Below, in pieces: positions 785 through 62,459 of a stretch of 64,000 nt of DNA. The notes under the pieces are model-generated. The model worked only from the letters and a program-made list of their open reading frames with translations, was not told the DNA's origin and did no database searches. Every line of letters begins with the position of its first letter. Within the stretch, counting starts at the first letter, position 1. A program made the position numbers and the translations under genes. Source of the stretch: Octopus sinensis (Eukaryota); contig NC_043010.1 in NCBI RefSeq assembly GCF_006345805.1, positions 60,884,001-60,948,000 of the forward strand. Direction: 5' to 3'.

Positions 785-1189
785 CACCCTACCCACCCCA
801 CACCTGGTGCTTTGGGTGACTTTAACAGACCCCACTCAATTACAAAACTCTAGGTTCTACCTTCTGACTTTGCCTAACTTCATTTGTCCCTTTCCCTCTG
901 TCACACAGACCCTAATTAGAGTCACAAACACAGCCATTCTTGATCTCATTCTGTTGTTCTTTACTTCTTCTATTCCTTTATTCCTGTACTTGTGAGCCCA
1001 ACTGGAGCACCAACTTGAAGGTTTTTGCCAATCGAAACAAGCCCAGTCCTTATTTGGAGCTTGAGGTTATTCAGTCAGCCTCTGTCCTCAAACACCCCTC
1101 ACACTCTGTATACACACAGACACACACATACTCACACATGTGTGTATGTAAGTGTATACATGTATATATAACTGGTATAGTCATGGACA

Positions 1190-1690
1190 CATCACCACCA
1201 CCACCACAACCATCACTACCACTACCACCACAACCAAACCACCACCACTACCACAACCATTACCACCACCACCACAACCACCACCACCACCGCCACCACA
1301 ACCATCACCACCGCCACCACAACCATCATCACCACAACCATCACCACCACCACCACCACCACCACCGCCACCACAACCATCACCACAACCATCACCACCA
1401 CAACCATCACCACCACCACCACCATCACCACCGCCACCACAACCATCATCACCACAACCATCACCACAACCATCACCACCACTACCACCATCACCACCGC
1501 CACCACAACCATCACCACAACCATCACCACCGCCACCATCATAACTGCCACCACTGCCACCACAACCCTGCCACCACAACCATTATCACCACCACCACCA
1601 CCACCATCACCCCACCACTGCCACCACAACCATCACCATCACAACCACCACCACAACCCCCACCCCACCCAGCCACCATCTCTACCTCCG
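1190..1690. repeat. CAC/CAA/CAT trinucleotide low-complexity repeat
   Basis: Degenerate (CAC)n with recurring CAACCATCACCAC units. It produces the His-, Pro- and Thr-rich pseudo-ORFs in the track. Confidence 0.95.
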
Positions 1691-1984
1691 TCATCACTGA
1701 TTCTGTCATTATTAATCTCTTCACAGCAAACAGATCTAAAATTGAAATATGTTCCTCTAAAATAAACATATCGGACACTCAATCACTCGTTTCAACCCAC
1801 CCTGGACCACCACCATTCTCTCGCATGTCACTCTCACTCCCACCCTCACCTCTCTGTATTATGAGTTGATTATCTAAATCTTAATCCACCTGTAGACTTC
1901 TATTCTTTCTCCTTATATACACAGACACATATATACACAATGTATATACACACACACACACAACTGCATGGACGACAGACGTTA

Positions 1985-2210
1985 AATGATGATGATGGTG
2001 GTGGTGAGGAGGAGGATGGGGGTGTTGTGGTGATGATGATGATGGTGATGGTGGTGATAGTGATGGTGGTGGTGGTGGTGGTGAGGAGGAGGAGGAGGAT
2101 GGGGTGTTGTGGTGGTGATGATGATGATGGTGATGATGGTGATGGTGATGGTGGTGGTGGTGGTGAGTAGGAGGAGGAGGATGGGGTGTTGTGGTGGTGA
2201 TGATGATGAT
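1985..2210. repeat. GGT/GAT/GAG trinucleotide repeat with about 80-bp higher-order units
   Basis: GGAGGAGGATGGGG(G)TGTTGTGGTG recurs near 2008, 2091 and 2171. Confidence 0.9.
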
Positions 2211-2800
2211 GATATACATCCATACATATACATGTGTATGCATGTCTGTGTGTATACATATACACACACACACACACATATATATGTATGTATATACATG
2301 TATGTTTATGCAGATAAGTGTATGTATGTGTGTGTGTCTGCGTCCTTCTCGGCTTTCCTAAGCCCCTCTCCACCACCACCACCACCCACCACCCACCACC
2401 CACCACTTGATGAAACACTAATAAATCGGTCACATGACCAAAGGATACCATCCCAGGGCAGCACTGACTGCAACACTACCAATGCCTTGAACCACCATAC
2501 AACTGTAGCCCCAACTACCACACCACTGGAACTTCAACAACTACACCACTGGACCTACAAAACTAAGCAGGTGTGTTCCTTTTACTTATTGCATCATTTT
2601 TACTGCAATTAACCTGATTAATTAGTGTAATTAGTTCAGTTATTTTACTTTAGTAACATTTTGCTGACCAAGTCTCAGATGTCTGGACATGGCTGGATTA
2701 AACTAGCGTTTTGTTATATTCTGCATAACAGCTCTACATCTGTCCATCCATCCATCCATCTGTCTATTTATCTATCTCTCTATCTATCTATCTATCTATC

Positions 2801-2852: not shown

Positions 2853-3250
2853 CAGTCATTTGACTGCGGCCATGCTGGAGCACCGCCTTTAATCGAGCAA
2901 CTCGACCCCGGGACTTATTCTTTGTAAGCCCAGTACTTATTCTATCGGTCTCTTTTGCCGAACCGCTAAGTAACGGGGACATAAACACACCAGCATCGGT
3001 TGTCAAGCGATGTTGGGGGGACAAACACAGACATACAAACATACACGCACACACACACATATATATATATAAATATATACATATATTCGATGGGCTTCTT
3101 TCAGTTTCCATCTACCAAATCCACTCACAAGGCTTTGGTCAGCCCGAGGCTATAGTAGAAGACACTTGCCCAAGGTTCCACGCAGTGGGACTGAACCCGG
3201 AACCATGTGGTTGGTTAGTAAGCTACTTACCACACAGCCACTCCTGCGCC
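2853..3250 (-). mobile_element. tRNA-derived SINE family A (head + internal microsatellite + 3' module), full length
   Basis: On the minus strand, the head GGCGCAGGAGTGGCTGTGTGG has A-box-like and GGTTCAGTCCC B-box-like motifs, followed by CCTTGGGCAAGT, a (TA)n/(TG)n tract and a 3' module ending in CAGTCAAATGACTG. Many copies occur in the window. Confidence 0.85.
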
Positions 3251-4593: not shown

Positions 4594-5333
4594 ATATATA
4601 TATGTATGCATAATAAGCATGGTCACATGTGTGTTAGTGTTTGTAGGCACTAATGTAACTTGGTGTAAATACCATATGATATTTAAATTTGTAAAGGAAA
4701 TTAACCTTCAAAAGGGATCCAAATTGGATAAAGTTAAAACTAATAAACACCAATAGATACATCGTTGAACACTGGAGTTGATATATTTACTAATGGTTCA
4801 TGGAAGTGGTACCTTTAATCTCATGAGATGGCTTATTCAACCATTCAGCTTTGTTAAGCAAAACTTGAAGTTGTCAGCATAAATTTTACAACATTCTCCT
4901 CCTCCTCCTCATGTGTGTTTTCCATGCTGGCATGGTTGGACAGTTCGACAGGAGCCAATGAGGCAGAGGACTACATCCAGCTCTACTGTCTGCTTTGGCA
5001 GGGTTTCTGTGGCTGGATGCCCTTCCTAATGTCAACCATTCCCCCCATGCATTGTAATTTCCACTAATTCTCCATTATTATATCCTTGTTTGCTTTTGTT
5101 TTACATTTATTTATGTTTTCTATTCAAAAGCGAAACCAGTGGTGTTGGCTCATTTGACATGAAGTTTCTGGCCCCTCAAAGATGAAATTACTATAAACAA
5201 AGGCTGTCTCCTGTCTTCACCCCAAACTACCTTACCCTGTACCCATCACTGCAGATGAATTACCTGATGTATTCTCCCTGGGGCTTCATGAGTGAAACCA
5301 CTCTCACAAAACTGTGTCCAACTTCATTGTGTC

Positions 5334-7637
5334 ATGTTCGCACTATTACTAGTGTTTATAAACCTCCAGTGTTACTTGTGTGTCGACTTAATATATTATG
5401 TGGAAGAAGGCGAAAAACCAAACACATACATTGGTGACATTGGAGCTGATTCTAAGCTGCTGAACAGCATCAGTGCCAAAGAAATGGATCTGATTCGATT
5501 CAGTCAGGTGGGGCAAGGTGTAACAGACGGTTCTCATTTCTTCCGAGTGTCAGAAAAAACAGGCAAGCTGTACACTACTCAAATACTAGATGCTGAGTCG
5601 ATGTGTGTTCAGAAAATAGAATGTTCCAGAAGTGTAGATATTGCAATTAAAAAAGCCGAGACATTTATGAAAATTCTTGAGATAAAAATATACGTGTTGG
5701 ACCTTAATGATCATCGGCCCCAATTTCCAAAGAGTAAAGTGAAAATAGAGTTTTTAGAGGATGACAAAAGGGGGAGAATAAGGAAGATTCCAAGTGCTCT
5801 GGATAAAGATATTGGGATATTAAACTCAAAGATAGACTATCAACTGAAGGTCAGTTCTAGTGACCCCTTTTCACTGACCGTGACCAAACGCCTGGATGAA
5901 ACAGATGAACTGTGGATTTCTCTCAAAGACAATCTTGACAGAGAAACAAAAGATATGTACACTATGCAGGTAATTGCTAAAGACCGTGGGGTCCCACCTA
6001 AAGAGAGTGTTCTGGATGTTGAGGTGGAAGTTCTTGATGTCAATGATAATACACCAGTATTTGCACAGAATGCCTACAACATTACTGCCATCAATGAAAA
6101 CTATCAGACTTCTCCGATTCTGGTGTTATCAGCGAGTGATAAAGATACGGAGAGGAATGGTGACATCACATACCATTTCAGCATCAACACACCAGAGAAT
6201 TTAAAATCGCATTTTGAATTGAATGAGAAGACAGGTGAATTGTTCTTGCAGAGGAAGTTTATTTCAGGACAGAAGCTGACACATTGGTTGTATGTGGAGG
6301 CAATTGATGGAGGCAAACCTCCTCTCAGTTCTATGGCTGCTGTTCTGGTGCGTGTCATCAATCAACTTAATCAACCACCAAAGATATATTTCAACTTTGT
6401 GTCGAGGGCATCAGGAAAAACTGCCATTATATCGGAACAGATCCGAGTCGGTAGTTTCATTGCGTACATTAAAGTGGAAGATGAAGATGTGGGTCAAAAT
6501 GGTGACATTGAATGTCAGATGAACCACGACAAATTCCAACTGGTAGAATTAGGTCCCAAGAAATTCAAAGTTATTATTAAAAATAAAGTTGACAGAGAGT
6601 TGAATGACTACTATGACGTCACAATCATCTGCCGTGACAAGGGTAAGCCACCTTTGCAGACCAAAGACAAGTTCTCAGTCATCATAACAGACGTTAACGA
6701 TGAACATCCAAAATTTTCCAAGAAATTCTATCAGTTTTGGACAAAAGAAAACAACCAAGCTAACATCTCAATTGGTGTCCTTAGTGCCACAGATGCAGAC
6801 CTCGGAGCGGGGGGACAGTTACATTTCTCTCTGTCTTCCAGCAATGAATCTAAGACACCATTTCAAATTTCCAAAGATGGGGTGATATCAGCAAAAGAAC
6901 CATTAGACCGTGAACAACAAGGCTGTTACAAGTTTGAAGTCGTGGCTTGTGATAAAGGGACCCCATCACTGAGCAGCACAGCAAGTATCAATGTCATAAT
7001 TACAGATGAAAATGATAATGCCCCCTATTTCATATTCCCCCCAAATAACCCCTTTCCCCTGGATATTTCCTACCACAACTCCAGTCAAAACAACATTACC
7101 ATTTTAAAGGCAAAGGACATAGACTGGGGTCAGAATGCTTTCCTTACATACAACATTATCTCAGGAAACAATCGAAGCTTGTTTGATATCAATCATTACT
7201 CAGGTTTACTCCTATTTGCCCGCCAAATCAGTGTCAACGATTCGGGTGTCCATGAGCTACAGATATCTGTGAAGGACAGTGGTACGCCTTCTCTCTCGTC
7301 TCTTACTAATTTAACTCTGACAGTGACCATTAACAACAAACAAATGAAATCAAAGACATCTGCTCAAAAACAAACTGAGGTAGGACTAGATTCAAGTTTG
7401 TTGGTCGTCATAATCCTGGTGGCTGTTGTGATGTCCGTATCTTTTGCAATTCCACTGACATGGTGCATTATTAAATGCAACAACAGGAACAATCAGCATT
7501 ATCACCGCAAAATCCGTCCATCAGATCAAAGTGCACCGGATCCAGATGCACATACAAGTGCAGCAACATGCAGACAACCAAACTTAGATGGAGTCAACTC
7601 TTCTGTTCTTCTTGAAACAACAGAAATTACACAACAG
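5334..7637 (+). CDS. Pcdh: Protocadherin exon 1: signal peptide, 6 cadherin (EC) repeats, TM helix, start of cytoplasmic tail
   Basis: ATG at 5334 (MFALLLVFINLQC); the track start at 5292 is a GTG. EC1 has a CX5C motif (CVQKIEC). Linkers are DLNDHRP, DVNDNTP, DVNDEHP and DENDNAP, with LDRE/VDRE motifs. TM is LLVVIILVAVVMSVSFAIPLTWCII. Perfect phase-0 donor CAG|GTGAGT at 7637/7638. Confidence 0.97.
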
Positions 7638-7829
7638 GTGAGTTGAAAAACTTGTCTAAGCTACCAATATCTACTCTCAAAGATAGAATATATGGTTCTG
7701 AATACTATACCCAACATACTCCCTAATCTTGGAACAATGTCAGACTTTCATTTCTCGTCTAAATTCTATACATTACATGCTTCTTACTGTTGGTTAAGCC
7801 AAGGTCTGCTCCAATTCTACACCAGTTAA

Positions 7830-8802: not shown

Positions 8803-9443
8803 GTAGGCAGGTCTTCATCCCACACATGCATCCCCACATATTACCTAATGTAATGATGAAGATGAGGGTGGTGAAGGACGGTGGTGGTGGTGTGGTGGTG
8901 ACGACGACATACAGGGGTTGGCATAATTGACTGAAAACAATTAAAGGTGGTGCTCCAGCATGACCAGAGCCCAGTATCTGAAACCAATAAAAACAAATAG
9001 ATTGAGCTGTTAGAAACATCAAATATGATACCTTGTGGTATTTGTTCTGACTCCCTCCATTCTGGGTTCAAATCCCACCAAAGTCAGATTTGTCTTTCGT
9101 CCTTTCAGAGTTAATAAAAAGGAGATCAATCCAAGGTGGGACTTTAACAACCTCAAGCCAGATACCTTGTGGTATTTATTCAGATTCTTTGTAGTTCGAG
9201 TTGGAATTCTATTTTGGTTGAATTCTTTTATTTTATTCTTTTTTCTTTTCAGTCATTTGACTGTGGCTATGCTGGAGCACCGCCTTTAGTCAAACAAATC
9301 GACCCCAGGACTTATTCTTTATAAGCCTAGTACTAATTCTATTGGTTTTTATTGGCAAACTGCAAAGTTATGGGGACATAAACACACCAGCATCGGTTGT
9401 CAAGCGATAGTTGAGGGACAAACACAGACACACAAACATATAC

Positions 9444-12339: not shown

Positions 12340-12541
12340 TCCCTGTTTGATCATCAGTTCTGATTTGACCGATGCTGGTATGTTTACGTCCCCGTAACTT
12401 AGCGGTTCGGTAAAAGAGACCGATAGAATAAGTACTAGGCTTACAAAGAATAAGTCCTGGGGTCAATTCGTTCGACTAAAGGCGGTGTTCCAGCATGGCC
12501 ACAGTCAAATGACTGAAACAAGTAAAAGAGAGTAAAGAGTA
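12340..12541 (+). mobile_element. SINE family A 3' module
   Basis: GCTGGTATGTTTACGTCCCCGTAACTTAGCGGTTCGG ... CAGTCAAATGACTGAAACAAGTAAAAGAG. Confidence 0.8.
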
Positions 12542-12649
12542 TTAAAATTCGTTTTTAGTAATATTTTCTCAATAAGAAATGCGTGTCCGAGTTCCAATTA
12601 ATTATCTCCCTTGGATCATTTCACTTTCTGAGATAAAATTACAGCCAAG

Positions 12650-13050
12650 AAAGTCCGGGAGTTCTTTGAAAGACCGGACTCCTGCCAGAATATTGGTTTC
12701 ATATTTTGGCACAAGGCAAACAGGTTTCGGGGAAGGGCCAAATTGATTACATCGACTCCAGTGCTTCACTAGTACTTATTTTATCGACTCCGAAAGGATG
12801 AAAGGCATAGTCGAAACCGGCAGAATTTGAACTCAGAACGTATAGAAGCAGGAAATAGCTCCAAGCACTTTGCCCTGCATGCGAGTGCTTCTTATTTTAC
12901 TGCCCACAAGGGGTTACACACAGCGGGGACAGACAAGGACAGACAAACGGATCGAGTTGATTACATCGACCACAGTGCGTAACTGGTACTTATTTAATCG
13001 ACCCCGAAAAGTCGACCTCGGCGGATATTTCTGCCAGCTCGCCGCCCTTG
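12650..13050 (-). mobile_element. Two adjacent SINE family B copies
   Basis: Two reverse-complement bodies, at about 12650-12880 and 12895-13050. Confidence 0.7.
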
Positions 13051-13200
13051 CTACAGCAATCGTATTGAAAACAAAAACCAACACCCTGTGTTGTTGTTGT
13101 TGTTTTTTTTTTGTTTGTTCTTTGATGGGGGGAATTTACTGTATATATGTAAGAATGTGTGTATGTATATATATATATATATATATATACTTATATTCTT

Positions 13201-13236
<36 letters not shown>

Positions 13237-13238
<2 letters not shown>

Positions 13239-13920
13239 CATCATCATCATCATCATCATTTAGCGTCCGTTTTCCATGCTAGCATGGGTTGGACGGTTCA
13301 ACTGGGGTCTGGGGAACCCGAAGGCTGCACCAGGCCAGTCAGATCTGGCAGTGTTTCTACAGCTGGATGCCCTTCCTAACGCCAACCACTCCGAGAGTGT
13401 AGTGGGTGATTTTATGTGCCACCGACACAGGTGCCAGACGAGGCTGGCGAACGGCCACGCTCGGATGGTGTTTTTATGTGCCACCGACACAGGTGCCAGA
13501 CGAGGCTGGCAGACGGCCACGCTCGGATGGTGTTTTTATGTGCCACCGACACAGGTGCCAGATGAGGCTGGCGGACGGCCACGATCGGATGGTGTTTGTT
13601 ACGTCCCCAAAGCACGGAGGCCAGTCTATGCGGTACTGGCTACGGCCACGTTCGGATGATTTTCTTGTGTGCCACCGGCACTGGTACCACAAAGATACAA
13701 ATTCCATTTATGTTCATCTATTTTGATTTGTTTTGATTTGATTTGATTTTCACTTGCCTCAACAGGTCTTCACAAGTGTCACAAGAAGGAAGGTATGCAC
13801 AGGTGGACTGTCTACGTCGCCGGGTCTTCGGATGGTGTCTTTATGTGCCACCGACACAGGTGCCAGATGTGGCTGGCGAATCGGATGGTTTTCTTGTGTG
13901 CCACCGGTACTGGAACCACA
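13237..13920 (-). mobile_element. RTE-type 3' end element (family C) with internal 62-bp minisatellite
   Basis: (CAT)n tail at 13237-13260 and family C body. The unit TTTATGTGCCACCGACACAGGTGCCAGACGAGGCTGGC... repeats at a 62-bp period (13414, 13476, 13538), with further partial copies. Confidence 0.75.
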
Positions 13921-14289
13921 AAGATATATATATATATATACAATGCAGGTAGGGTATGCATGAAAGTGTGTATGCATGTGTGTACCTCTGTCTCCTTGTG
14001 TGTGCTTGTCTGAGTGTCTGTGTGAGGGGTTTTGCGACTATGTACCATGTCTGTATGTGTCTCCATATGTGTTTTTAAAAAAATGACTCTTCCCAGACAC
14101 AACAGTACATACATACATGTATGTATGTATATAATTTAGAGAGAAAAAAACCTCTATTAAACAATTCGATAATGAAACGTGTGCTGCTACAAACGAAAGA
14201 TTGCCAAAACCTTATTATAAAAATATATACATGCATGTGCATTTTCACTCAAGACAGGTATTATATCAATAAAAAATTAAAGTCGATAT

Positions 14290-15033
14290 TTAGTCAATAT
14301 ATTCAGCTTGTTGGTCAGCGATGGCCTTGTCCAAAACTGCCTCCACTTTCTCGGTATTAACTTCACACTCACAATATTCACTGAGAGCAAATAACAGCTT
14401 AGGGCACAGATCCTTTAGGTGCATTTTATGGGGCACCAGGTTAATAAAAACATAGCATTTTTTATCCAGTGGGGTTTCTTGAGCTTTAATATCAGTTTCC
14501 TCTGCATCCGATCCTAGATGTTTGGCAACTAATTTCCACGAATCATCATCGCTTATATGCTTCAAAATATCTCTTAAAATAGGGAAGTTCATTTCTTCGA
14601 TTCTTTCTGCTTTCTCAATAAGGCGGGCTAGGTGTTCGTTGTAACCTTTACACTCACCAGGAAAATACATTTCAATATACTTGTCCATAGCAGATTCAAC
14701 ATTTTTTCTGGCTTTCTCGTTAGCTTTTTCTTCATCGAAAAAGTCCACGACGGTTTGAATAGTTTCTTCGATGCTTCTTTTTCCCTTTTCGGGAAGGCTT
14801 TTCGCATAATAATCAACAGGTAGATAGGTAACATCATTAAAAAAGTCTTCAGATCTTTCTTGCAAATGTCTCTCTGCTTCTTCTACCAATTCTTTTTGCT
14901 TCTTTTCATCTTCCAATTCTTTTTGCTTCTTTTCATCTTCCAATTCTTTTTGCTTCCTTTCATCTTCCAAATATATTTTTCTTACTTTATTAAGTTTATT
15001 CTGGTATTCACGATTTCTCTTTCTCTCGCTCAT
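14290..15033 (-). CDS. Intronless 247-aa ORF: coiled-coil KQKELEDEK repeat plus death-domain-like C-terminus
   Basis: Uninterrupted frame from ATG 15033 (MSERKRNREY) to TAA 14290, with natural globular composition and a 27-bp internal repeat x2-3. The C-terminal DILKHISDDDSWKLVAKHLG...DI...KCY...LLFALSE resembles the death-domain W-K-x-L-A-x-x-L-G helical pattern. This is motif recognition only. Confidence 0.75.
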   Translation of the reverse strand: MSERKRNREYQNKLNKVRKIYLEDERKQKELEDEKKQKELEDEKKQKELVEEAERHLQERSEDFFNDVTYLPVDYYAKSLPEKGKRSIEETIQTVVDFFDEEKANEKARKNVESAMDKYIEMYFPGECKGYNEHLARLIEKAERIEEMNFPILRDILKHISDDDSWKLVAKHLGSDAEETDIKAQETPLDKKCYVFINLVPHKMHLKDLCPKLLFALSEYCECEVNTEKVEAVLDKAIADQQAEYID

Positions 15034-15045
15034 TGCTGCGAACAA

Positions 15046-16582
15046 GGAAATGAAATACAAAATTATAAAATATATAAAAGACGAATCGGAAACGATGAAG
15101 ACGAAACGTATTTACTTTGTTTAAGAAGTTCTCTTGTGTTTTAATAACCAGACGTTTTACCATCGCAACCACCCAACTAGGAAATAAAATACAAAATTAT
15201 AAAATATATAAAAGACGAATCGGAAACGATGAAGACGAAACGTATTTACTTGGTTTAAGAAGTTCTCCTTGTGTTTTAATAACCAGACGACGTTTTACCA
15301 CATCGCAACCACCCAACTAGGAATAAAATACAAAATTATAAAATATATAAAAGACGAATCGGAAACGATGAAGACGAAACGTATTTACTTTGTTTATGAA
15401 GTTCTCTTGTGTTTTAATAACCCACGTTTTACCATCGCAACCACCCAACTAGGAAATAAAATACAAAATTAAAAATATATAAAAGACGAATCGGAAACGA
15501 TGAAGACGAAACGTATTTACTTTGTTTAGAAGTTCTCTTGTGTTTTAATAACCAGACGTTTTACCATCGCAACCACCCAACTAGGAAATAAAATACAAAA
15601 TTATAAAATATATAAAAGACGAATCGGAAACGATGAAGACGAAACGTATTTACTTTGTTTATGAAGTTCTCTTGTGTTTTAATAACCAGACGTTTTACCA
15701 TCGCAACCACCCAACTAGGAAATAAAATACAAAATTATAAAATATATAAAAGACGAATCGGAAACGATGAAGACGAAACGTATTTACTTTGTTTATGAAG
15801 TTCTCTTGTGTTTTAATAACCAGACGTTTTACCATCGCAACCACCCAACTAGGAAATAAAATACAAAATTATAAAATATATAAAACGACGATCGGAAACG
15901 ATGAAGACGAAACGTATTTACTTTGTTTATGAAGTTCTCTTGTGTTTTAATAACCAGACGTTTTACCATCGCAACCACCCAACTAGGATAAAATACAAAA
16001 TTATAAAATATAAAAGACGAATCGGAAACGATGAAGACGAAACGTATTTACTTTGTTTATGAAGTTCTCTTGTGTTTTAATAACCAGACGTTTTACCATC
16101 GCAACCACCCAACTAGGAAATAAAATACAAAATTATAAAATATATAAAAGACGAATCGGAACGATGAAGACGAAACGTATTTACTGTGTTATGAAGTTCT
16201 CTTGTGTTTTAATAACCAGACGTTTTAACCATCGCAACCACCCAACTAGGAAATAAAATACAAAATTATAAAATATATAAAAGACGAATCGGAAACGTTG
16301 AAGACGAAACGTATTTACTTTGTTTAAGAAGTTCTCTTGTGTTTTAATAACCAGACGTTTTACCATCGCAACCACCCAACTAGGAAATAAAATACAAAAT
16401 TATAAAATATATAAAAGACGAATCGGAAACGATGAAGACGAAACGTATTTACTTTGTTTATGAAGTTCTCTTGTGTTTTAATAACCAGACGTTTTACCAT
16501 CGCAACCACCCAACTAGGAAATAAAATACAACATTATAAAATATATAAAAGACGAATCGGAAACGATGAAGACGAAACGTAT
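15046..16582. repeat. Tandem array of a 134-bp unit, 11 full copies plus one half
   Basis: Units start at 15046, 15180, 15320, 15452, 15584, 15718, 15852, 15986, 16116, 16249, 16383 and 16517 (partial). They are near-identical apart from small indels and a TAAG/TATG variant. There are no unique spacers. Confidence 0.97.
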
Positions 16583-16609
16583 TAACGTTCACAAATAGAT
16601 CATTATAGT

Positions 16610-17310
16610 TCAGATGTATATAGTTTTAGACAGCTTGGTGGGCCAGTGTACCTGACGACCACTACAAGTTTCAGTGACGTATGGAGGAGGGGTCGGTGTG
16701 TGTGGTAGTGTTGGGGGTGGTTGCAGTGGAGGAGCATCTGTTTTATATTGAACTGTGAATGTGGGAGATGTATGAAGTAGTATTGTATCAGTCTGTGTAT
16801 GCCTGCTTAAGCCTGTCTATCAAGACAGTTTCTCTTTTAGCATTAATGTCAATGGTATATAGTTTGTGTGCGACAGGACACAATAGGGTCCTGTATATGG
16901 AGGTGTGAGAGGGGTTTTCACAGCATCACTTCGTAGAAACACATGGGTCCAAGAATCAATGTCTTTTGGAACTGATGATTTAGAGATTTTGCACTGAAAG
17001 AAGTGACATAATATTTGTATTATAGTATGTATGCAGGTGTGTAATGAGAACAGTGATTTTGAGAATGTGTGAGATAAAATATCTTCGTTTATGAACCATA
17101 TATCTTGTGTCGAGGTGAATAGACATGTAAGTCGCACGTGGGAGATTGTGGGGAGAGCTACAGAGAAGACATGTGTCTTTGAGCAAAAGCTGACAGGAAC
17201 AGAGAACTTCTACCATGTAGCTCAGAGCAAGACTAATGTCTCAAAATAAGGTTACTGTATCAAAACGAGGCTAGTGTATTAAAGCAAAGCTAGATGCCTC
17301 ATTGATATGT
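16610..17310 (-). mobile_element. Decayed Ty3/Gypsy pol (integrase C-terminal) fragment
   Basis: VPKDIDSWTHVFLRSDAVKTPLTPPYTGPY (GPY/F motif) and terminal SGRQVHWP. Multiple stops and frameshifts. Confidence 0.8.
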
Positions 17311-17326
17311 TCGTCTGCTGTGCAGG

Positions 17327-17880
17327 TCATCATCATCATCGTTTAATGTCTGCTTTCCATGCTAGCATGGGTTGGACGGTTTGACTGAGGGCTGGCGAAC
17401 CAGATGGCTGCACCAGGCTCCGGTCTTGATCTGGCAGAGTTTCTACAGCTGGATGCCCTTCCTAACACCAACCACTCTGAGAGTGTAGTGGGTGCTTTTA
17501 CGTGCCACCAGCACGGGGGCCAGTCAGCCAGTACTGGTAACGACCTCGCTCGAATCTTTTTACACATGCCACCGGCACAGGTGCCAGTAAGGCGATGCTG
17601 GTAACGATCACACTCGAATGGTGCCTCTTACATGCCACCGGCATGGAAGCCAGTTAGCCACTCTGGCAACAATCACACTTGGATGGTGCTCTTAGCACCT
17701 TACTAGCATGAGGCACAAGTGCCAGTAAGGCGAAGCTAGTAACGATCATACTCGAATGGTGCCTTTTATATGCCACTGGCATGGAAGCCGGTTAGTCGCT
17801 CTGTCAATGATCACGCTCGGATGGTGCTCTTAGCACCCTACTAGCATGGGGCTCGGATGGTGCTCATGCCCGTCATCGAA
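17327..17880 (-). mobile_element. Family C (RTE 3' end) element with internal tandem repeats
   Basis: (CAT)n tail, conserved body and repeated GTAACGATCACACTCGAATGGTGCC units. Confidence 0.75.
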
Positions 17881-18474
17881 TTTGACTTTGATTTTGGTTT
17901 TAATTTCGATTTACATATTACTATGTAACATGTAGCTCTGCTACAAGTGTTTCGTGATTTCTTTTTTCTACATAGAAATAGCGTTAGCCTGCCCCTTTTT
18001 TTTTTCAATCCACAGCCCTTCCAATCTCACCTTGATTATTTCTGTTGGCTACAGATGAGAAAGTGTGCTGAAGACCTTTTCCTCACATTTGTAGTAGATA
18101 TTTACTCAATTCATCAATAAAATTATGTTAATAATAATAAAACCACGTTTCATTTCTGTCTTAGAGAATAAAGAAACTAAGACTAAACAATATAATAATT
18201 AAAATAAGATCAGGGATCACGCACGAAAGCAAATTTGCTCACGTGGATCACACACGAAATAGCACTAGCACAAACTAACTAAAAAGTAACCTAAAGTTAT
18301 TGCCCTTTAATTTGCAGATCACCCCACCCCCAAATTGGCACCTATATATATATATATATACATATTTTTTAATAATATATTATTATTATTAATATAAGGA
18401 AATTAGTATCCAAACTCATCATAAAGATATACCCATGTGAAAATACTTATTATATTAAAGATATATATAAATAC

Positions 18475-18858
18475 TAGCAGTATCGCCCGGCGTTGCTCAG
18501 GTTTGTAAGGGAAATAACTATAAAGCATTTTTAGAGAGTTATAGCCAAAAAATAGCAAAAAAATGGAAAAAAAATTATGGTAAATTTTTTTTGAGAGTTA
18601 GAAAAGGTCGAGTTGCGTCCCCTAGACAGTCTGTGGTTTGTGTTTCTGATTCTCGACCCCATGTCGAATTTATCGATTTTTTTCAGAACTGGGGGAACTT
18701 TTCAAAATTTTCGCTGCGTTAGTTTTGAATTATGACATTGGGCTATGTGTGTGTCAAGTTTCATCAGAATCGGTTGAAAGCCGTGGTCAGGGTGAGGGTA
18801 CAACCTAACAGACACACAGAAACACACACAGACAAACTGCCGTTTATATAGAGAGAGA
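18475..18858 (-). mobile_element. Non-autonomous Helitron
   Basis: On the minus strand it begins A|TCTCTCTCTATATAAACGG and ends GCAACGCCGGGCGATACTGCTAG|T. This gives a 5' TC, a 3' CTAG with a GC-rich subterminal tract, an A|T insertion site and no TSD. Confidence 0.75.
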
Positions 18859-18914: not shown

Positions 18915-19071
18915 GAGCAGATCAACCCCAGGATTTATTCTTTGTAAGCCCAGTACTTATTCTGTCGTCTCTCTTTTGCCGAACCGCTAAGTTACAGGGA
19001 CGTAAACACACCAGCATCAGTTATCAAGCGATGTTGGGGGACAAATACAGACACACAAACATACACACCCG

Positions 19072-19268: not shown

Positions 19269-19504
19269 TACATTCATATACGAAACCTAACTTTCAGTGT
19301 TGGCTCTAATTCCGATAGAATATCTGTAGAGATGACTTTAAAAAGTCATTGAGCCACACTGCTAACACAGGTAGATCACACTATTCACTTAAAAGCCTTT
19401 AATATAATTCTCAGTAGTATATGAAATGGTCGATTTGTTACTGTTGCCTTGGCATTAAGCAACAAGACATTCTTATTTTAATATCTTCAATATATTTATC
19501 AATG

Positions 19505-19845
19505 GAAATTGTAGTTGTGATCTCTGTGCTGGTGGCACGTAAAAAGCACCATCCGAACGTGGCCGATGCCAGCGCGGCCTTGACTGTCTTCCATGCCAGT
19601 GGCACGTAAAAAGCACCAATCCAATCGTGGCCATTGCCAGCCTCACCTGGCACCTGTGCTGGTGGCACGTAAAAAGCACCCACTACACTCACGGAGTGGT
19701 TGGCGTTAGGAAGGGCATCCAGCTGTAGAAACACTGCCAGATCAGACTGGAGCCTGGTGCAGCCTTCTGACTTCCCAGACCCTGGTTGAACCATCCAACC
19801 CATGCTAGCATGGAAAACGGACGTTAAACGATGATGATGATGATG
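19505..19845 (+). mobile_element. Family C (RTE 3' end) element
   Basis: TGGCACGTAAAAAGCACC repeats, GGAAGGGCATCCAGCTGTAGAAAC and a (GAT)n tail. Confidence 0.75.
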
Positions 19846-20140: not shown

Positions 20141-20535
20141 GGCGTAGGAGTGGCTGTGTGGTAAGTAGCTTGTTTTCCAACCACATCGTTCCGGGTTCAG
20201 TCCCACTGCGTGGCACCTTGGGAAAGTGTCTTCTACTATAGCCTCGGGCCGACCAAAGCTTTGTGAGTGGATTTGGTAGACGGAAACTGAAAGAAGCCCA
20301 TCGTATATATGTATATATATATATATATATGCGTTTGTGTCTGTGTTTGTCCCCCTAACATTGCTTGACAACCAATGTTGGTGTGTTTATGTCACCATTA
20401 CTTAGCAGTTCGGCAAAAGAGACCGATAGAATAAGTACTGGGCTTACAAAAGAATAAGTGCCGGGGTCGAGTTGCTTGATTAAAGGCGGTGCTCCAGCAT
20501 GGCCGCAGTCTGAAACAAGTAAAAGAGTAAAGAGT
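20141..20535 (+). mobile_element. SINE family A, full length
   Basis: GGCGTAGGAGTGGCTGTGTGG head through the AGTAAAAGAGTAAAGAG tail. Confidence 0.85.
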
Positions 20536-20729
20536 ACAAAAGATTAAAAAGAAGCCAGTACATTCTACAGCCCCCAGTAAAAGGGAAATAGGAAGATCAA
20601 GAAGGCAATGGTTGAACAACATGTAAGAATGTGTTTAGTGTAGAAAAAATTGTAAATAAATGATGTGAAATCCTTGGTCCTGACAGCCTCAGTCATATTT
20701 GTTGGAGTTAAATTTCATCATCATCATCA

Positions 20730-29268: not shown

Positions 29269-30900
29269 TCATGAGAGGTGATGGAGGACAAAGTCGGTCA
29301 AGCGTCCAGGTAAGTATTTGTGGTACTCAATGTTTGCTTGGTTTAAAACTCTGGCAGTGAGACACTGCAGGGAAAGAGGTTCTTTTACAGGAACAAGTTT
29401 AGCAGCATCAAAGACAATGTACGGTGATTCTTTGAGAAATTTTCCCAGAAACTGGTTTTGTGTTTCATGACACGCTTGGAGAATAATGTCTGTCGGCTGC
29501 CATTTTCCATGAAGCCTTAAAGAGATTGCAGGTTTACTTCCATCCGTGATGCCTTCCTGTTCAGCATGTGACTGTTCTGTCTGAGACAAAACCTTGGTGT
29601 ATCGATCAAGAACAGAACAGGAGAACCTCTGAAAGCTTACCGAATCCCATTTGTGTTGGTAATGAATGAGAATTTTGAGCAAGTTCACCACAAACAGTAA
29701 CAACGTTTCCCATGCATTCACCTTGTAAGAACTTTTCAAAGATCTTTCTTCACAGTTGCTGTTTTGGAGAGATTCCCAGTTGATGACGATATCACTAGCA
29801 ATCTGCCGCACAAGATTTATGACCTCCCTGAATGGCATCGAATAATGTTGATCTTTACTGTATATTTTCCAAAACACCTCCAACTCAAGTGTAACAATAT
29901 CAGGGCCCGTTACACACCTCATTCTTTGACAGGCTCGAAGTAAATGGCAATATATGTCCCATGCTAGTGAAACATTGCCGAGGTCGCACTGCAGCCATGC
30001 TGCATAACCTAAGGCCTCAAGTGACGTACAGCAAACCCCTAATACTTTTTCTGTCACCATTAGTGCAGGAAATTCAAAGACATCAATGTTGTGTTCAGCT
30101 TCATCAAGAGCTTTAATAAATATCTGTGTTGTGGTGCTGTCAAAGTACTGTTGTGGAGAATGTTGTGGGTAAGGAAAAGTTACCAGTAAATAGATGAGTA
30201 TTCTCCATTGCCAGTGTGTGGCAGCAAGCCGGAAACTGTTCTCACCGAGGCCATTGCATGTGTAAGGACTGAAGCCTTTCTGGAGGAGAAACTTAAACAC
30301 CTCTAAACTACCTTTACAGGCTGCAAAATGCAGGACTGTGTCACCCTTTGCATCAGTTGCATATAAATTAGCACCATTTGAAGAGAGGAGATCTACTAAC
30401 TCCGTGTTAAAGACCGATTCCATCAATGGAGTCACTCCTTTATGGTCAGCAAAATTAACATCAGAACCTCTTTCAATAAGAAACTTAACAATGTCCACGT
30501 TGCCACCCTTAACAGACATTTTCAGAGCAGTGCTACCCAAATGGTCTTTGACATTGATATCAGCTCCATAATCAAGAAGGATCTGTAACATATTCTTGCA
30601 GCGTTCTGATGCAGCCACTAAAAGAGGGGTCACTTGAGCATCATCATTATATATCACAGGTTGATCGACAGGAACATTGCATTCCTGTAACAAATACTGA
30701 ACAAGTTCCAAGTTGTTGTAGGAAACGGCCAGAAACAGCGCAGTGAATCCTTGGATCTTTCGGCTGGCAATACGTTTGCGATGTGGCATTTTAAGAGGGT
30801 CCAGTTTGGACTTCACACCAACCAGGTTACATTTCCTCACATAACGCATCACTTTGTTTGATATGGAAATAATCTGCTCTCCTGTAAGTTGTTGTGACAT
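29269..30900 (-). CDS. Ankyrin-repeat protein, Fem-1-like (CRL2 substrate receptor type), 543 aa
   Basis: About 6 N-terminal ankyrin repeats (TPLLVAA, TALKMSV, TPLMESV, TVLHFAA), a helical middle region and a C-terminal PLSLQCLTARVL BC/VHL-box-like motif. ATG 30900 follows the acceptor ttttttcag|GAAAG. The track's extra N-terminal 30 aa are mostly intronic. Confidence 0.88.
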   Translation of the reverse strand: MSQQLTGEQIISISNKVMRYVRKCNLVGVKSKLDPLKMPHRKRIASRKIQGFTALFLAVSYNNLELVQYLLQECNVPVDQPVIYNDDAQVTPLLVAASERCKNMLQILLDYGADINVKDHLGSTALKMSVKGGNVDIVKFLIERGSDVNFADHKGVTPLMESVFNTELVDLLSSNGANLYATDAKGDTVLHFAACKGSLEVFKFLLQKGFSPYTCNGLGENSFRLAATHWQWRILIYLLVTFPYPQHSPQQYFDSTTTQIFIKALDEAEHNIDVFEFPALMVTEKVLGVCCTSLEALGYAAWLQCDLGNVSLAWDIYCHLLRACQRMRCVTGPDIVTLELEVFWKIYSKDQHYSMPFREVINLVRQIASDIVINWESLQNSNCEERSLKSSYKVNAWETLLLFVVNLLKILIHYQHKWDSVSFQRFSCSVLDRYTKVLSQTEQSHAEQEGITDGSKPAISLRLHGKWQPTDIILQACHETQNQFLGKFLKESPYIVFDAAKLVPVKEPLSLQCLTARVLNQANIEYHKYLPGRLTDFVLHHLS

Positions 30901-31366
30901 CTTTCCTGAAAAAATAATAAAAATAATAATAATATTAGTGAGAGATGTTAGAAATAATAGTTCTTTTATATTACCAAATGGAAATAACAATTCCTTTATG
31001 TTATCATGTGGCTAATTGTCTTCTAATTAGGTTCTTCTAATAAACATCACAGTCTTAACCTTCAATAAATGCTAATTATGCAAATATTGATCAAAAACAA
31101 CCCCACAGTTAAATGTATGATTATGCCAGAGTTCCCAAGCAGATGGCATCAGTAATTAAATGAATCTATCAACATCTATAATCCTGATCTATTTAGAATG
31201 TAGACTCTTAATGACCAATTAATTATCAGTTAGTCAGTAAGTTTCTTTTATAATGAAATTTGTAGTCTAAAGGATTTTTAAGTATAATGACCTTATTAAC
31301 TTAGCTTGTATCTTAATTATCCACTTCTAAAAAACAAAAAGGGAAACAAAATAGCCAGCTGATTAC

Positions 31367-33649: not shown

Positions 33650-33859
33650 ACTCTTTTACTTGTTTCAGTCATTTGACTGCGGTCATGCTGGAGCACCGCC
33701 TTTAATCGAGCAACTCGACCCCAGCACTTATTCTTTGTAAGCCCAGTACTTATTCTATCGGTCTATTTTGCCGAACCGCTAAGTGACGGGGACATAAACA
33801 CACCAGCATTGGTTGTCAAGCAATGCTAGGGGGATAAACAGACACACAAACACACACAC

Positions 33860-39280: not shown

Positions 39281-39672
39281 GGCGCAGGAGTGGCTGTGTG
39301 GTAAGTAGCTTGCTAACCAACCACATGGTTCCTGTTTCAGTCCCACTGCATGGCATCTTGGGCAAATGGCATCCGGGCCGACCAATGCCTTGTGAGTGGA
39401 TTTGGTAGACGGAAACTGAAAGAAGCCTGTCGTATATATGTATGTATATGTATGTGTGTGTCTGTGTTTGTCCCCCTAGCATTGCTTGACAACTGATGCT
39501 GGTGTGTTTACGTCCCCGTCACTTAGCGGTTCGGCAAAAAAGAGACCAATAGAATAAGTACTGGGCTTACAAAGAATAAGTCCCAGGGTCGATTTGCTCG
39601 ACTAAAGGCGGTGCTCCAGCATGGCCACAGTGAAATGACTGAAACAAGTAAAAGAGTAAAAAAGAGTAAGAG
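39281..39672 (+). mobile_element. SINE family A, full length
   Basis: Head through tail. Confidence 0.85.
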
Positions 39673-41480: not shown

Positions 41481-42386
41481 ATATATATATCTCCCTCCTC
41501 CAGCTGACAGTTTTTTTGTACTTTTTCATGATGGAAAAAACACCTTTTGTGGCCGTTATAACGAAATTGCTTTCTTATATCAGAGTAATAAGGCATTTCA
41601 ATAGAACATCTTTACCCCAGGGAATTACTGGGTACACCAGCTAGTATATATATATATATGTTTGTGTGTGTGTGTGTGTTTGTCTCCCTATCATTGCTTA
41701 ACTACTGATGTTGGTGGGTTTACGTCCCCGTAACTTAGCAGTTCGGGAATAGATACCGACAGAATAAGTATTAGGCTAACAAAGAATAAGATCCTGGGTT
41801 CGATTTGTTCAACTAAAGGTGGTGCTCCAGTATGGCCGCGGTCAAATAACTGAAACAAAAGAATGTGCATGTGTGTATGTGTGCATGTATGTGTATGTGT
41901 GTGTGAAAGTGCGTGAGAGTGTGCACATACTGTAACACACACCAATCTACTAATAAACAGTAATAAACAATTTGATAACATACACAGACACACACACACA
42001 CATATGTATGTATGCGTATATATGTATATATATGTGTGTGTATGTATGTATGTATATATATGTGTGTATGTATATATGTGTGTGTGTGTTTGTGTGTACA
42101 TCTCTCTCTCCACCCCATATACACATATACATTCGATCCGTTTTCAAAGGAATCTACTGCTCGTAGCTTAGTTTTTCCTTGGGGCTGGCCAGATTGGAGC
42201 AATCTCAAGATTAATCAGCTGAAATTTCGAGGATGACCCGGTTCTTGACTGAAGATTAAAGGCTTCGAATGACCCGTCTGTGTTTTTTGTATCATCTAAC
42301 TGGATGTTTTGTGTTCTTGTCCCATTTTGAATTTTTTGTATATATATATATAGCGGCATACGTACACTTTGTTCTCTTATATGTAA

Positions 42387-42527: not shown

Positions 42528-42820
42528 ATCATCATCATCATCGTTTAGCGTCCACTTTCCATGCTAGCATGGGTTGGACGGGTCAACTGGGGTCTGTGAA
42601 GCTGGAAGGCTTCGTCAGGCCCAGTCAGATCTGGCAGTGTTTCTACGGCTGGATGCCCTTCCTAACGCCAACCACTCCGCGAGTGTAGTGGGTGTTTTTT
42701 ACGTGCCACCGACACGGGGCCAGACAGAGCTGGCAACCGGCCACGAACGGACGGTGCTTTTACGTGTCACTGGCACGGGGGCCAGCCGAGGCTGGCAACG
42801 GACGCGAACAGATGGTGCTT
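42528..42820 (-). mobile_element. Family C (RTE 3' end) element
   Basis: (CAT)n tail, body and internal repeats. Confidence 0.75.
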
Positions 42821-43213
42821 ATATAATAATATATATACACACATATATATTTATGTTTATATATATATACATAAATATATATGTATATATATATGTGTAT
42901 GTATATATATATATCGTTGACGTTCTCAAATGATCTTTGTACTTGTGATATTTTACTGTTTTTACCTCCATATCTTCGTGAGTTATTTTTGAGTAAACAT
43001 TATCTGAGAGAAATTTTCTTAAAGTAGTGGAAATGGCTAAAAAACTTTTTGGCTGCTATTTCTAGAAAGTTCAGTATGTGGCAAAGTAATTTATTTTACT
43101 AAGCCCTAATTATATAATGTAATGTTTTGAATTCGCCTTAAATGGTCCTTTTACATACTGAACACTACTTTGGTGAAATTGATTAATAACTAATTAGTTT
43201 TACCCTCAATTGT

Positions 43214-43314: not shown

Positions 43315-43630
43315 ATAGCCCCGGGCCGGCCAATGCCTTGTGAGTGGATTTGGTAGACGGAAACTGAAAGAAGCCTGTTGTATATATGTATATATATATA
43401 AGTGTGTGTGTATATGTTTGTGTGTCTGTGTTTGTCCCCCCAGCATTGCTTGACAACCGATGCTGGTGTGTTTACGTCCCCGTCACTTAGCGGTTCGGCA
43501 AAAGAGACCGATAGAATAAGTACTGGGCTTACAAAGAATAAGTCCCGGGGTCGATTTGCTCGACTAAAGGCGGTGCTCCAGCATGGCCACAGTCAAATGA
43601 CTGAAACAAGTAAAAGAGTAAAAGAGTATA
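43315..43630 (+). mobile_element. SINE family A, 5'-truncated
   Basis: Half head, microsatellite and 3' module. Confidence 0.8.
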
Positions 43631-62442: not shown

Positions 62443-62459
62443 ATATGTATGTAGATAGG

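What the first reader, a model, noticed from the sequence alone, without database searches (positions are those of the whole stretch)
14290..15033. Orphan intact ORF with coiled-coil repeat and death-domain-like C-terminus
This 247-aa frame is pristine among decayed repeats, intronless and CpG-retaining, and is unrelated to the three host genes. The last ~90 aa (ISDDDSWKLVAKHLG...ETDIK...LDKKCYVFI...LLFALSEYC) fit a six-helix death-fold pattern. An N-terminal KQKELEDEK x3 coiled coil could oligomerise it. Death-fold proteins act as immune and apoptosis adaptors, and viruses are known to encode death-fold decoys. It could be a mobile-element or viral cargo gene, or a young host gene.
Basis: partly seen in the sequence, partly recalled or inferred. 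Interest (0 to 1): 0.7.

Follow-up and report, generated by a model that had tools for sequence, protein, structure and literature searches.

The report
Octopus-only gene with probable death-fold domain
The ORF is a real, single-copy octopus host gene (already in RefSeq as uncharacterized LOC115219138) found only in octopods, whose C-terminal third probably forms a very divergent death-fold domain; it is not viral or transposon cargo.

Summary
The 247-codon frame is real: minus strand, 14290-15033, far longer than chance allows. The window is identical to the Octopus sinensis assembly GCA_006345805.1. The gene is RefSeq LOC115219138, "uncharacterized protein".

Relatives were found only in octopods: O. 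vulgaris, an unnamed species in Logan read assemblies (61% identity) and Argonauta hians (43%). Each genome has one copy. It always sits between the same ankyrin-repeat gene and a protocadherin. pN/pS is about 0.56. It is therefore a fast-evolving, lineage-restricted host gene, not mobile or viral cargo.

The KQKELEDEK x3 "coiled coil" is a 27-bp minisatellite expansion of this assembly only. RefSeq's protein and O. vulgaris have one unit; the other species have none.

The death-fold idea has weak but convergent support:
- Pfam Death reaches E = 0.046-0.049 (14 bits, below the 22.6-bit cut-off), in register, in the O. vulgaris orthologue only.
- A low-confidence AlphaFold model (pLDDT 65) has six helices.
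- Its best Foldseek matches in both PDB and the viral library are DD, CARD and PYD domains, none significant (best TM 0.55).

I put death-fold at about 0.65-0.7. Membership in Pfam Death is not shown.

A conserved, CpG-rich 134-bp tandem array abuts the start codon. Interest is modest.

The parts
14290..15033 (-). Complete single-exon CDS, 247 aa, including the stop. It is the O. sinensis gene LOC115219138.
   Evidence: ORF listing and sequence. The 20,744 nt around it are identical to GCA_006345805.1 CM016872.1. Orthologues are aligned. pN/pS is 0.56, P=0.0015.
14296..14586 (-). C-terminal domain, residues ~150-246. Six predicted helices; a probable divergent death-fold. It carries four invariant cysteines (C193, C210, C221, C223).
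   Evidence: AF2 helix boundaries agree between the full-length and the domain-only models. Pfam Death profile positions 4-52 of 86 align to residues 153-199 in the O. vulgaris orthologue at E 0.046-0.049. The Foldseek top matches are DD/CARD/PYD. Invariant columns are listed.
14587..14853 (-). Central conserved helical region, residues 61-149, with no recognisable family.
   Evidence: Conserved in all orthologues. It gives only inconsistent noise-level Pfam hits, nothing in the PDB profile search, and is not a duplicate of the C-terminal domain.
14854..15027 (-). N-terminal long helix, residues 3-60. It has a conserved basic ER-R-R-YQNK motif at its start, followed by a variable acidic/basic helix.
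   Evidence: AF2 predicts a helix over residues 3-60 with pLDDT 74-89. The motif is conserved in P0002 and P0003, while the rest is variable or absent.
14878..14970 (.). 27-bp in-frame minisatellite, 3.4 units, encoding KQKELEDEK x3. Its copy number varies.
   Evidence: TRF. The RefSeq protein lacks 54 nt (two units), and none of the 14 equivalent excisions has GT..AG ends. O. vulgaris has one unit. There is none in P0002 or P0003.
15041..16588 (-). 134-bp CpG-rich tandem array, 11.5 units, ending about 14 nt upstream of the start codon. It is presumed to be the promoter / 5' regulatory region of the gene.
   Evidence: TRF. Eleven spaced copies of the 36-nt core. CpG o/e 2.28. O. vulgaris has 4.5 units and the Logan orthologue at least 2, with the core 35/36 identical. 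The array is absent in Argonauta and elsewhere in the window.
29269..30990 (-). Ankyrin-repeat gene, a single ORF. It is the upstream syntenic anchor.
   Evidence: Pfam Ank. It is 79% identical to the gene in the same position and orientation next to the Argonauta orthologue.
5292..7646 (+). Protocadherin exon, convergent with the gene. It is the downstream syntenic anchor.
   Evidence: Pfam Cadherin, 1.5e-70. A cadherin gene lies on the opposite strand downstream of the orthologue in Argonauta, O. vulgaris and O. sinensis.

Best explanation
This is a genuine protein-coding host gene, single copy and with a single-exon CDS. It is O. sinensis LOC115219138. No relative was detected outside octopods, and the gene has kept its place between an ankyrin-repeat gene and a protocadherin since before Octopus and Argonauta split. 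It evolves fast but under purifying selection. The protein is all-helical and has no catalytic domain. It consists of a short conserved basic N-terminal motif, a helix of variable length (lengthened in this assembly by a 27-bp minisatellite), a conserved central helical region of unknown fold, and a C-terminal ~95-residue six-helix bundle that is most likely a highly divergent death-fold (death-domain-like) module. Inferred mechanism, not shown: like other small death-fold proteins, it would act as a non-enzymatic adaptor or regulator. Its C-terminal domain would dock onto the death-fold domain of a partner, with the N-terminal helix contributing self-association. Transcription is presumably driven from the conserved CpG-rich element that is tandemly amplified right up to the start codon.
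For: Real gene: the ORF is longer than any in 200 simulated windows. The frame is intact in O. sinensis, in the Logan species (61% identity) and in Argonauta (43%). pN/pS is 0.56 overall (P=0.0015) and 0.47 in the C-terminal domain (P=0.0055). Host gene: there is one contig per protein cluster. The order ankyrin gene -> this gene -> cadherin on the opposite strand holds in the window, O. vulgaris and Argonauta, and the ankyrin neighbour is 79% identical. Restricted: an exhaustive phmmer over 1.84 billion representatives and two searches of the 5.8-billion set found only octopod proteins. Likely transcribed (inferred): the RefSeq model omits 54 nt that cannot be a GT-AG intron, which points to transcripts of a shorter allele. 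Death-fold: Pfam Death is the only family hit by the O. vulgaris C-terminal piece, with two different boundaries, at E 0.046-0.049, aligning residues 153-199 to profile positions 4-52 of 86. Divided over the 24,736 models, that E-value is a per-model p of about 2e-6, because Death was the family named in advance. Two AF2 runs give the same six helices. About 11 of 49 Foldseek PDB matches are death-fold, including the TNFR1 DD (TM 0.42/0.49), a PIDDosome DD chain, NLRP3 PYD, ASC, NLRP1 and APAF-1 CARDs, and top of the list a redesign of the APAF-1 CARD. The top two BFVD matches are CARD proteins, the best with TM 0.55/0.56 and probability 0.85.
Against: No death-fold match is significant by the usual standards. 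The Pfam score is 14 bits against a 22.6-bit cut-off. The window's own protein and the Argonauta protein give no Death hit. Noise hits at E 0.04-0.1 are common for pieces of this size: 4 in 10 shuffled sequences and 8 in 4 central-region pieces. PDB sequence and profile searches found no death-fold chain. The best Foldseek E-values are about 0.5 and the model is of low confidence (pLDDT 65, pTM 0.49, alignment of 4 sequences). The DED hit in one orthologue is out of register with the Death alignment. Four invariant cysteines are not a death-domain feature and might indicate a different fold, such as a metal-binding one. The O. vulgaris assembly has one frameshift in the N-terminal part, so the N-terminus may be dispensable or that copy may be decaying. 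The adaptor function, the partners and any immune role are pure inference.
Confidence: 0.55

Rival explanations
1. It is a real octopod-restricted host gene, but the C-terminal helical bundle is not a death-fold. It would be a lineage-specific all-alpha domain, possibly stabilised by its four invariant cysteines (for example by binding a metal), with a function unrelated to death-fold signalling.
For: All death-fold scores are below threshold. Noise hits at the same E-value are frequent. The model is of low confidence. C193, C210, C221 and C223 are invariant across a 43%-identity comparison. Small helical bundles attract one another in fold searches.
Against: The sub-threshold hits are not random. 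The family named in advance is the one that appears, in register, and death-fold proteins head the lists of two independent structure libraries. By contrast, shuffled sequences and the central region hit unrelated, mutually inconsistent families.
Confidence: 0.3
2. It is a cargo gene of a transposable element or an integrated virus, such as a viral death-fold decoy.
For: The CDS is intronless, CpG o/e is higher than in the surroundings, and the gene sits among repeats. A ~75-nt inverted repeat pair flanks it at 12389-12463 and 18925-19000. The closest structural matches in the viral library are viral CARD proteins.
Against: There is one copy per genome, and the flanking genes are the same in Octopus and Argonauta. 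The inverted pair is two copies of a dispersed ~175-bp SINE-like repeat that has at least 12 copies in the window. No transposase, RT or viral gene lies beside it. There is no relative in 2.9 million viral contigs or among 15 billion proteins outside octopods.
Confidence: 0.02
3. It is a chance or decaying ORF with no protein product.
For: There are no Pfam domains. Evolution is fast: 43% identity against 79% for the neighbouring gene. The O. vulgaris assembly has one frameshift. pN/pS is fairly high at 0.56.
Against: The length is beyond chance. The frame is kept in three lineages even though synonymous sites are saturated against Argonauta. pN/pS is significantly below 1. Long invariant blocks remain, such as the VFINLVP and FALSE-CEC stretches.
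Confidence: 0.03

Closest known systems
RefSeq XP_036365263.1, 'uncharacterized protein LOC115219138' (Octopus sinensis), with its orthologues CAI9733426.1 (O. vulgaris) and GAB1604154.1 (Argonauta hians)
   Same: It is the same gene. The window is identical to the assembly that carries this model, and the model spans the same start and stop.
   Different: The RefSeq protein has 229 aa and lacks two of the three 9-residue units encoded in the genome. None of the database entries carries any domain or functional annotation.
Death domain family (Pfam PF00531), for example the TNFR1 death domain (PDB 1ich) and the PIDDosome DD chains (2of5)
   Same: The domain has the right size (~95 aa) and six predicted helices. 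Residues 153-199 align in register to helices 1-4 of the profile. The W-K-L/V-x-A-K/R-H-L-G stretch sits where, from my recollection of the family, death domains have a similar motif. These are the best DD-type structural matches.
   Different: The score is below the family cut-off (14 against 22.6 bits). TM is 0.38-0.49. The window's own sequence gives no hit. Four invariant cysteines are atypical for the family. No receptor, kinase, ankyrin or other partner domain is attached.
Small death-fold adaptors such as FADD, CRADD/RAIDD, EDARADD and TRADD (named from established knowledge; none came back as a sequence hit)
   Same: A protein of about 200-250 residues, without an enzymatic domain, with a death-fold module at the C-terminus preceded by another protein-interaction region. 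This is the architecture proposed here.
   Different: There is no detectable sequence relationship. The N-terminal and central parts are not DED, CARD or TRADD-N. The distribution is limited to octopods, whereas those adaptors are widespread in animals.
CARD domains, including viral ones: Clandestinovirus 'MAVS' A0A8F8PK68, equine herpesvirus 2 E10, APAF-1 CARD 1cy5 and its redesign 6jcc
   Same: These are the best overall structural matches of the predicted C-terminal domain: TM 0.55/0.56 in BFVD, and top rank in PDB for the CARD redesign.
   Different: They are not significant (E about 0.5) and share 17-18% identity. There is no Pfam CARD hit. The gene is chromosomal and syntenic, not viral.

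Membership tests
Death domain (Pfam PF00531) / death-fold superfamily | Sequence match to the family profile at or above the curated cut-off (22.6 bits) | tested here: not met
   The best score is 14.2-14.3 bits, E 0.046-0.049, and only for the O. vulgaris orthologue's C-terminal piece. There is no hit for the window's protein, P0002 (DED only, E 0.09-0.1, out of register) or the Argonauta protein.
Death domain (Pfam PF00531) / death-fold superfamily | Pre-specified-family test: is Death the family that emerges from all of Pfam, and is the alignment in register? | tested here: inconclusive
   Death and DED are the only families hit by any C-terminal piece. Death positions 4-52 of 86 align to residues 153-199, which leaves room for helices 5 and 6. 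Shuffled and central-region controls hit unrelated families at similar E-values. The result is suggestive, not proof.
Death domain (Pfam PF00531) / death-fold superfamily | Compact bundle of six antiparallel helices, about 80-100 residues | tested here: inconclusive
   AF2 predicts six helices at 141-157, 165-172, 179-183, 188-197, 206-220 and 227-246 in two runs, but pLDDT is 61-65. Foldseek's best matches are death-fold proteins, yet TM is 0.33-0.56 and E is at least 0.48.
Death domain (Pfam PF00531) / death-fold superfamily | Homotypic binding to another death-fold domain, or oligomeric assembly | not testable with these tools
   No interaction data are available. No partner was identified.
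Transposable-element or viral cargo gene | Multiple copies or variable genomic position | tested here: not met
   There is a single copy in the window and one contig per protein. The neighbours are the same in O. sinensis, O. vulgaris and Argonauta.
Transposable-element or viral cargo gene | Element hallmarks around the gene (terminal repeats of its own, transposase/RT/integrase or viral genes), or viral relatives | tested here: not met
   The flanking inverted pair belongs to a dispersed SINE-like family with at least 12 copies in the window. There is no such ORF nearby. There are no relatives in viral contigs.
Taxonomically restricted (lineage-specific) gene | No detectable homologue outside the clade, with conservation and constraint inside it | tested here: met
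   Only octopod hits were found among 1.84 billion representatives and the 5.8-billion set. The frame, the synteny and pN/pS below 1 are conserved. Unannotated cephalopod genomes could not be searched by tblastn.
   There are three units only in this genome sequence, one in the RefSeq protein and in O. vulgaris, and none in P0002 or Argonauta.

The most novel reading that the evidence does not exclude
This would be an octopod-specific innate-immunity or cell-death adaptor. It would be a fast-evolving death-fold protein born in, or diverged beyond recognition within, Octopoda. Its expression would be governed by a conserved CpG-rich cis-element that has been tandemly amplified up to the start codon (2 to 11 or more copies, depending on species), so that dosage or inducibility varies between species and individuals.
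Probability: 0.2. Interest if true: 0.5.

Novelty: new member of a known kind. Interest (0 to 1): 0.3.

Why it matters
Very little is known about cephalopod innate-immune and cell-death signalling, and lineage-restricted genes are usually left as "uncharacterized". If the C-terminal domain is confirmed as a death-fold, LOC115219138 would gain a testable domain annotation. It would also add an octopod-specific component to death-fold signalling. It would be an example of a death-fold module too divergent for Pfam. The promoter-abutting, copy-number-variable tandem array and the in-frame minisatellite make the locus a small natural case of repeat-driven variation in both regulation and protein length. 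None of this overturns current understanding, so the finding is a modest annotation gain rather than a new kind of system.

Tried and rejected
1. Viral or mobile cargo. I rejected this on synteny, copy number, the lack of viral relatives and the SINE nature of the flanking inverted pair.

2. The 134-bp repeat unit being homologous to the 5' end of the CDS, which would mean the array arose from the gene's start or the reverse. The alignment score was below that of shuffled sequences, so I rejected it. Only in O. vulgaris does one unit include the first bases of the CDS, which is a later higher-order duplication.

3. An internal duplication, that is, a tandem death-fold like DED+DD. hhalign of the central against the C-terminal alignment matched only the 10 residues that both alignments share.

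4. The 54 nt missing from the RefSeq protein being an intron. None of the 14 equivalent excisions has GT..AG ends.

5. PDB sequence and profile searches of the whole protein, the C-terminal domain and the central region. These gave only chance hits, such as the designed ThreeFoil protein.

6. Foldseek of the full-length model. It was uninformative at pLDDT 61.

7. A third database search, with the C-terminal profile at E <= 10, meant to pull in annotated death-domain proteins. It returned only the O. vulgaris protein.

8. Identifying the species or library type of the Logan runs SRR11869384 and SRR11869391 from the literature, and looking for any paper on LOC115219138. Nothing turned up.

9. 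Rfam over 12500-18500. There were no matches.

10. An N-terminal bZIP or NLS reading of the basic motif. There is no Pfam support, and the motif is only partly conserved in Argonauta, so I make no claim.

Full report
**1. The observation**

A 744-nt frame runs on the minus strand from the ATG at 15033 to the TAA at 14290-14292 and encodes 247 residues. In 200 first-order Markov simulations of the window the longest ATG-ORF averaged 134 aa and never exceeded 211, so the frame is not a chance product. The KQKELEDEK repeat is a 27-bp tandem repeat at 14878-14970 with 3.4 copies and 95% matches. CpG o/e is 0.73 in the ORF, 0.47 in the window and 0.42-0.58 in the ORFs of the neighbouring genes. tblastn finds no second copy in the window.

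**2. What the window is and whether the gene is known**

The protein has only a handful of relatives.
- A word-indexed search of 5.8 billion proteins found two.
- An exhaustive phmmer over 1.84 billion cluster representatives found two real ones plus one spurious repeat protein.
- A profile search found the same set.

The relatives are:
- CAI9733426.1, "hypothetical predicted protein" of Octopus vulgaris.
- XP_036365263.1, "uncharacterized protein LOC115219138" of O. sinensis, which is in the same 90% cluster.
- A 230-aa protein at 61% identity, from two Logan read assemblies of unknown species.
- GAB1604154.1 of Argonauta hians, 43% identical in the alignment.

The 20,744 nt around the gene are base-for-base identical to GCA_006345805.1 chromosome CM016872.1. 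The window is therefore O. sinensis, and the ORF is LOC115219138. None of these entries carries a domain or a function.

**3. Host gene, not cargo**

In Argonauta the orthologue lies downstream of an ankyrin-repeat gene on the same strand, and upstream of a cadherin gene on the opposite strand. The window has exactly this arrangement when read on the minus strand: ankyrin gene 29269-30990 (-), the ORF, and protocadherin 5292-7646 (+). The O. vulgaris and O. sinensis records show the cadherin in the same place. The ankyrin proteins of the window and of Argonauta are 79% identical over their full length.

Each protein was seen on one contig only. An inverted repeat pair at 12389-12463 and 18925-19000 does flank the gene. 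However, it consists of two copies of a dispersed ~175-bp SINE-like repeat that occurs at least 12 times in the window in both orientations. No relative exists in 2.9 million viral contigs. The mobile-element or viral-cargo reading is thus not supported, and the misjoin or contaminant worry is answered by three independent assemblies.

**4. Constraint**

Against the 61% orthologue, pN/pS is 0.56 over 227 codons (binomial P=0.0015 against neutrality) and 0.47 in the C-terminal 108 codons (P=0.0055). NG86 gives dN 0.23 and dS 0.46. Synonymous sites are saturated against Argonauta, yet the frame is intact. The gene is 43% identical between Octopus and Argonauta, where its neighbour is 79% identical. 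It is a fast-evolving but constrained coding gene.

In the O. vulgaris assembly one single-base length difference in a homopolymer run interrupts the long frame in the N-terminal part. The deposited model therefore starts at another ATG in a different frame. Whether this is a sequencing error or real cannot be decided here.

**5. The "coiled-coil repeat"**

The three KQKELEDEK units are encoded in the genome, but the RefSeq protein (229 aa) has one. It spans the same start and stop, so 54 nt are left out. None of the 14 equivalent 54-nt excisions has GT..AG ends. The simplest reading (inference) is that the supporting transcripts came from an allele with one unit. O. vulgaris has one unit. The 61% orthologue and Argonauta have none.

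AlphaFold does predict a long helix for residues 3-60 (pLDDT 74-89). Most of it is this variable insert, however, so a conserved oligomerising coiled coil is not supported. What is conserved at the N-terminus is a short basic motif (ER-R-R-YQNK).

**6. The death-fold question**

*Sequence tests.* The full-length proteins give no Death hit in Pfam. Scanning the C-terminal pieces alone gives two families in all of Pfam.
- Death (PF00531) is hit by the O. vulgaris piece at E=0.049, 14.2 bits against a cut-off of 22.6. Residues 153-199 (window numbering) align to profile positions 4-52 of 86. The hit is reproduced with other boundaries at E=0.046.
- DED is hit by the 61% orthologue at E=0.09-0.1, out of register with the Death alignment.

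The window's own piece differs from the O. vulgaris piece by one residue (T instead of I in the predicted third helix) and gives no hit.

*Controls.* One reversed and nine shuffled versions of the sequence gave 4 hits at E 0.04-0.16, all to unrelated families. Four central-region pieces gave 8 such hits, also to unrelated families. An E of 0.05 is therefore noise level in a blind search. It carries weight only because Death was the family named in advance, which corresponds to a per-model p of about 2e-6 before allowing for the roughly 30 related pieces scanned and somewhat optimistic E-values. PDB sequence and profile searches found no death-fold chain.

*Structure tests.* The full-length model (pLDDT 61) and the domain-only model (108 aa, 4 sequences, pLDDT 65, pTM 0.49) give identical helix boundaries, with six helices between residues 141 and 246.

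Foldseek of the domain model against PDB gives no significant match; the best E is 0.54. About 11 of the 49 listed matches are nevertheless death-fold:
- rank 1, a redesign of the APAF-1 CARD;
- rank 2, the TNFR1 death domain (TM 0.42/0.49);
- NLRP3 PYD, ASC CARD, a PIDDosome DD chain, NLRP1 CARD, APAF-1 CARD, the pyrin PYD and the zebrafish ASC PYD.

Against the viral library, the top two matches are CARD proteins. One is a Clandestinovirus protein named MAVS, with TM 0.55/0.56 and probability 0.85. The other is equine herpesvirus 2 E10.

*Judgement.* Three weak lines converge. I put the probability of a death-fold at about 0.65-0.7. Membership of Pfam Death is not demonstrated. Four cysteines (C193, C210, C221, C223) are invariant from Octopus to Argonauta and are unexplained by the death-fold reading.

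**7. The rest of the protein**

The central region (residues 61-149) is conserved but matches nothing. Pfam gives only inconsistent noise, the PDB profile search gives chance hits, and it is not a duplicate of the C-terminal domain.

**8. The upstream array**

A 134-bp tandem array occupies 15041-16588 and ends about 14 nt before the ATG.
- It has 11.5 units here, 4.5 in O. vulgaris and at least 2 in the Logan orthologue. It is absent in Argonauta and elsewhere in the window.
- Its CpG o/e is 2.28.
- The 36-nt core of the promoter-proximal unit is 35/36 identical in the Logan species, although synonymous sites of the CDS differ at 35%. The core is therefore a conserved non-coding element, presumably part of the promoter (inference).
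- Each unit also has a TATA-like A/T stretch (read).
- The unit is not homologous to the start of the CDS.

**9. Mechanism and comparison with the known**

*Shown:* this is a conserved, single-copy, syntenic, lineage-restricted coding gene for an all-helical protein without a catalytic domain.

*Inferred:* the C-terminal six-helix bundle is a divergent death-fold. The protein then works like the small death-fold adaptors (FADD, CRADD, EDARADD and TRADD, named from established knowledge), by docking onto a partner's death-fold domain. It is not a sequence-level member of any of those families.

*Rivals:*
- A non-death-fold helical domain (0.3).
- Mobile or viral cargo (0.02).
- A non-functional ORF (0.03).

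**10. Verdict**

The finding amounts to a plausible domain annotation for an already catalogued, octopod-restricted uncharacterized gene, plus two copy-number-variable repeats at the locus. Novelty: new member of a known kind. Interest: 0.3.

Noticed in passing
window 15041-16588 (also L004 9312-9938; L001 1-240): A 134-bp CpG-rich (o/e 2.28) tandem array ends about 14 nt upstream of the gene's ATG. It has 11.5 units in O. sinensis, 4.5 in O. vulgaris and at least 2 in the Logan species, and is absent in Argonauta. The 36-nt core is 35/36 identical across species whose synonymous sites differ by 35%. Each unit has a TATA-like stretch, and on the other strand GAAA-type half-sites that remind me of IRF/ISRE elements (recollection only, untested).
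   Followed up: partly
window 14878-14970: RefSeq's protein for this gene omits 54 nt (two 27-bp units) of the genomic ORF. No GT..AG excision can produce it. This points to a repeat-number polymorphism between the genome individual and the transcript evidence.
   Followed up: yes
L004 9900-10100 (O. vulgaris orthologue): One single-base length difference in a homopolymer run interrupts the long frame in the O. vulgaris assembly. The deposited 206-aa model begins at an ATG in another frame. This could be an assembly error or a real N-terminal truncation.
   Followed up: partly
window 14360-14460 (residues 193-223 of the protein): Four cysteines (C193, C210, C221, C223) are invariant from Octopus to Argonauta, in a domain that is otherwise about 49% identical. 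This might be a metal or redox site and is not typical of death domains.
   Followed up: no
window 12389-12463 and 18925-19000; also about 2853-3000, 9232-9397, 20371-20536, 33651-33813, 39492-39668, 41704-41858, 43456-43629, 51584-51753, 60808-60952: A dispersed ~175-bp SINE-like repeat has at least 12 copies in both orientations. Two of them form the inverted pair that brackets the gene region.
   Followed up: yes
window 29269-30990 (-): The ankyrin-repeat gene is encoded by one uninterrupted ORF, as is its Argonauta orthologue (79% identity). The region thus holds three neighbouring genes with single-exon coding regions: the protocadherin, the finding's gene and the ankyrin gene.
   Followed up: partly
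window 13405-13597 and 17564-17852 (related copies about 19438-19803, 42574-42933): Tandem repeats of 62-65 bp and 138 bp, from one dispersed family, lie on both sides of the gene. Their translations recur in many spurious ORFs of the window.
   Followed up: no
window 62032-62487 (-): A 151-aa ORF resembles, from my recollection, the C-terminal tail of a non-LTR retrotransposon reverse transcriptase. It gave no Pfam hit at E <= 0.001.
   Followed up: no
window 55736-58774 (-): These are C2H2 zinc-finger ORFs (Pfam zf-C2H2, zf-H2C2_2), with poly-Gly, poly-Ala and poly-His tracts. They fit the known expansion of zinc-finger genes in octopus.
   Followed up: no
window 940-2600: Long His/Pro/Thr-rich pseudo-ORFs in several frames are produced by CAC/CCA-type microsatellites. 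They are not genes.
   Followed up: no
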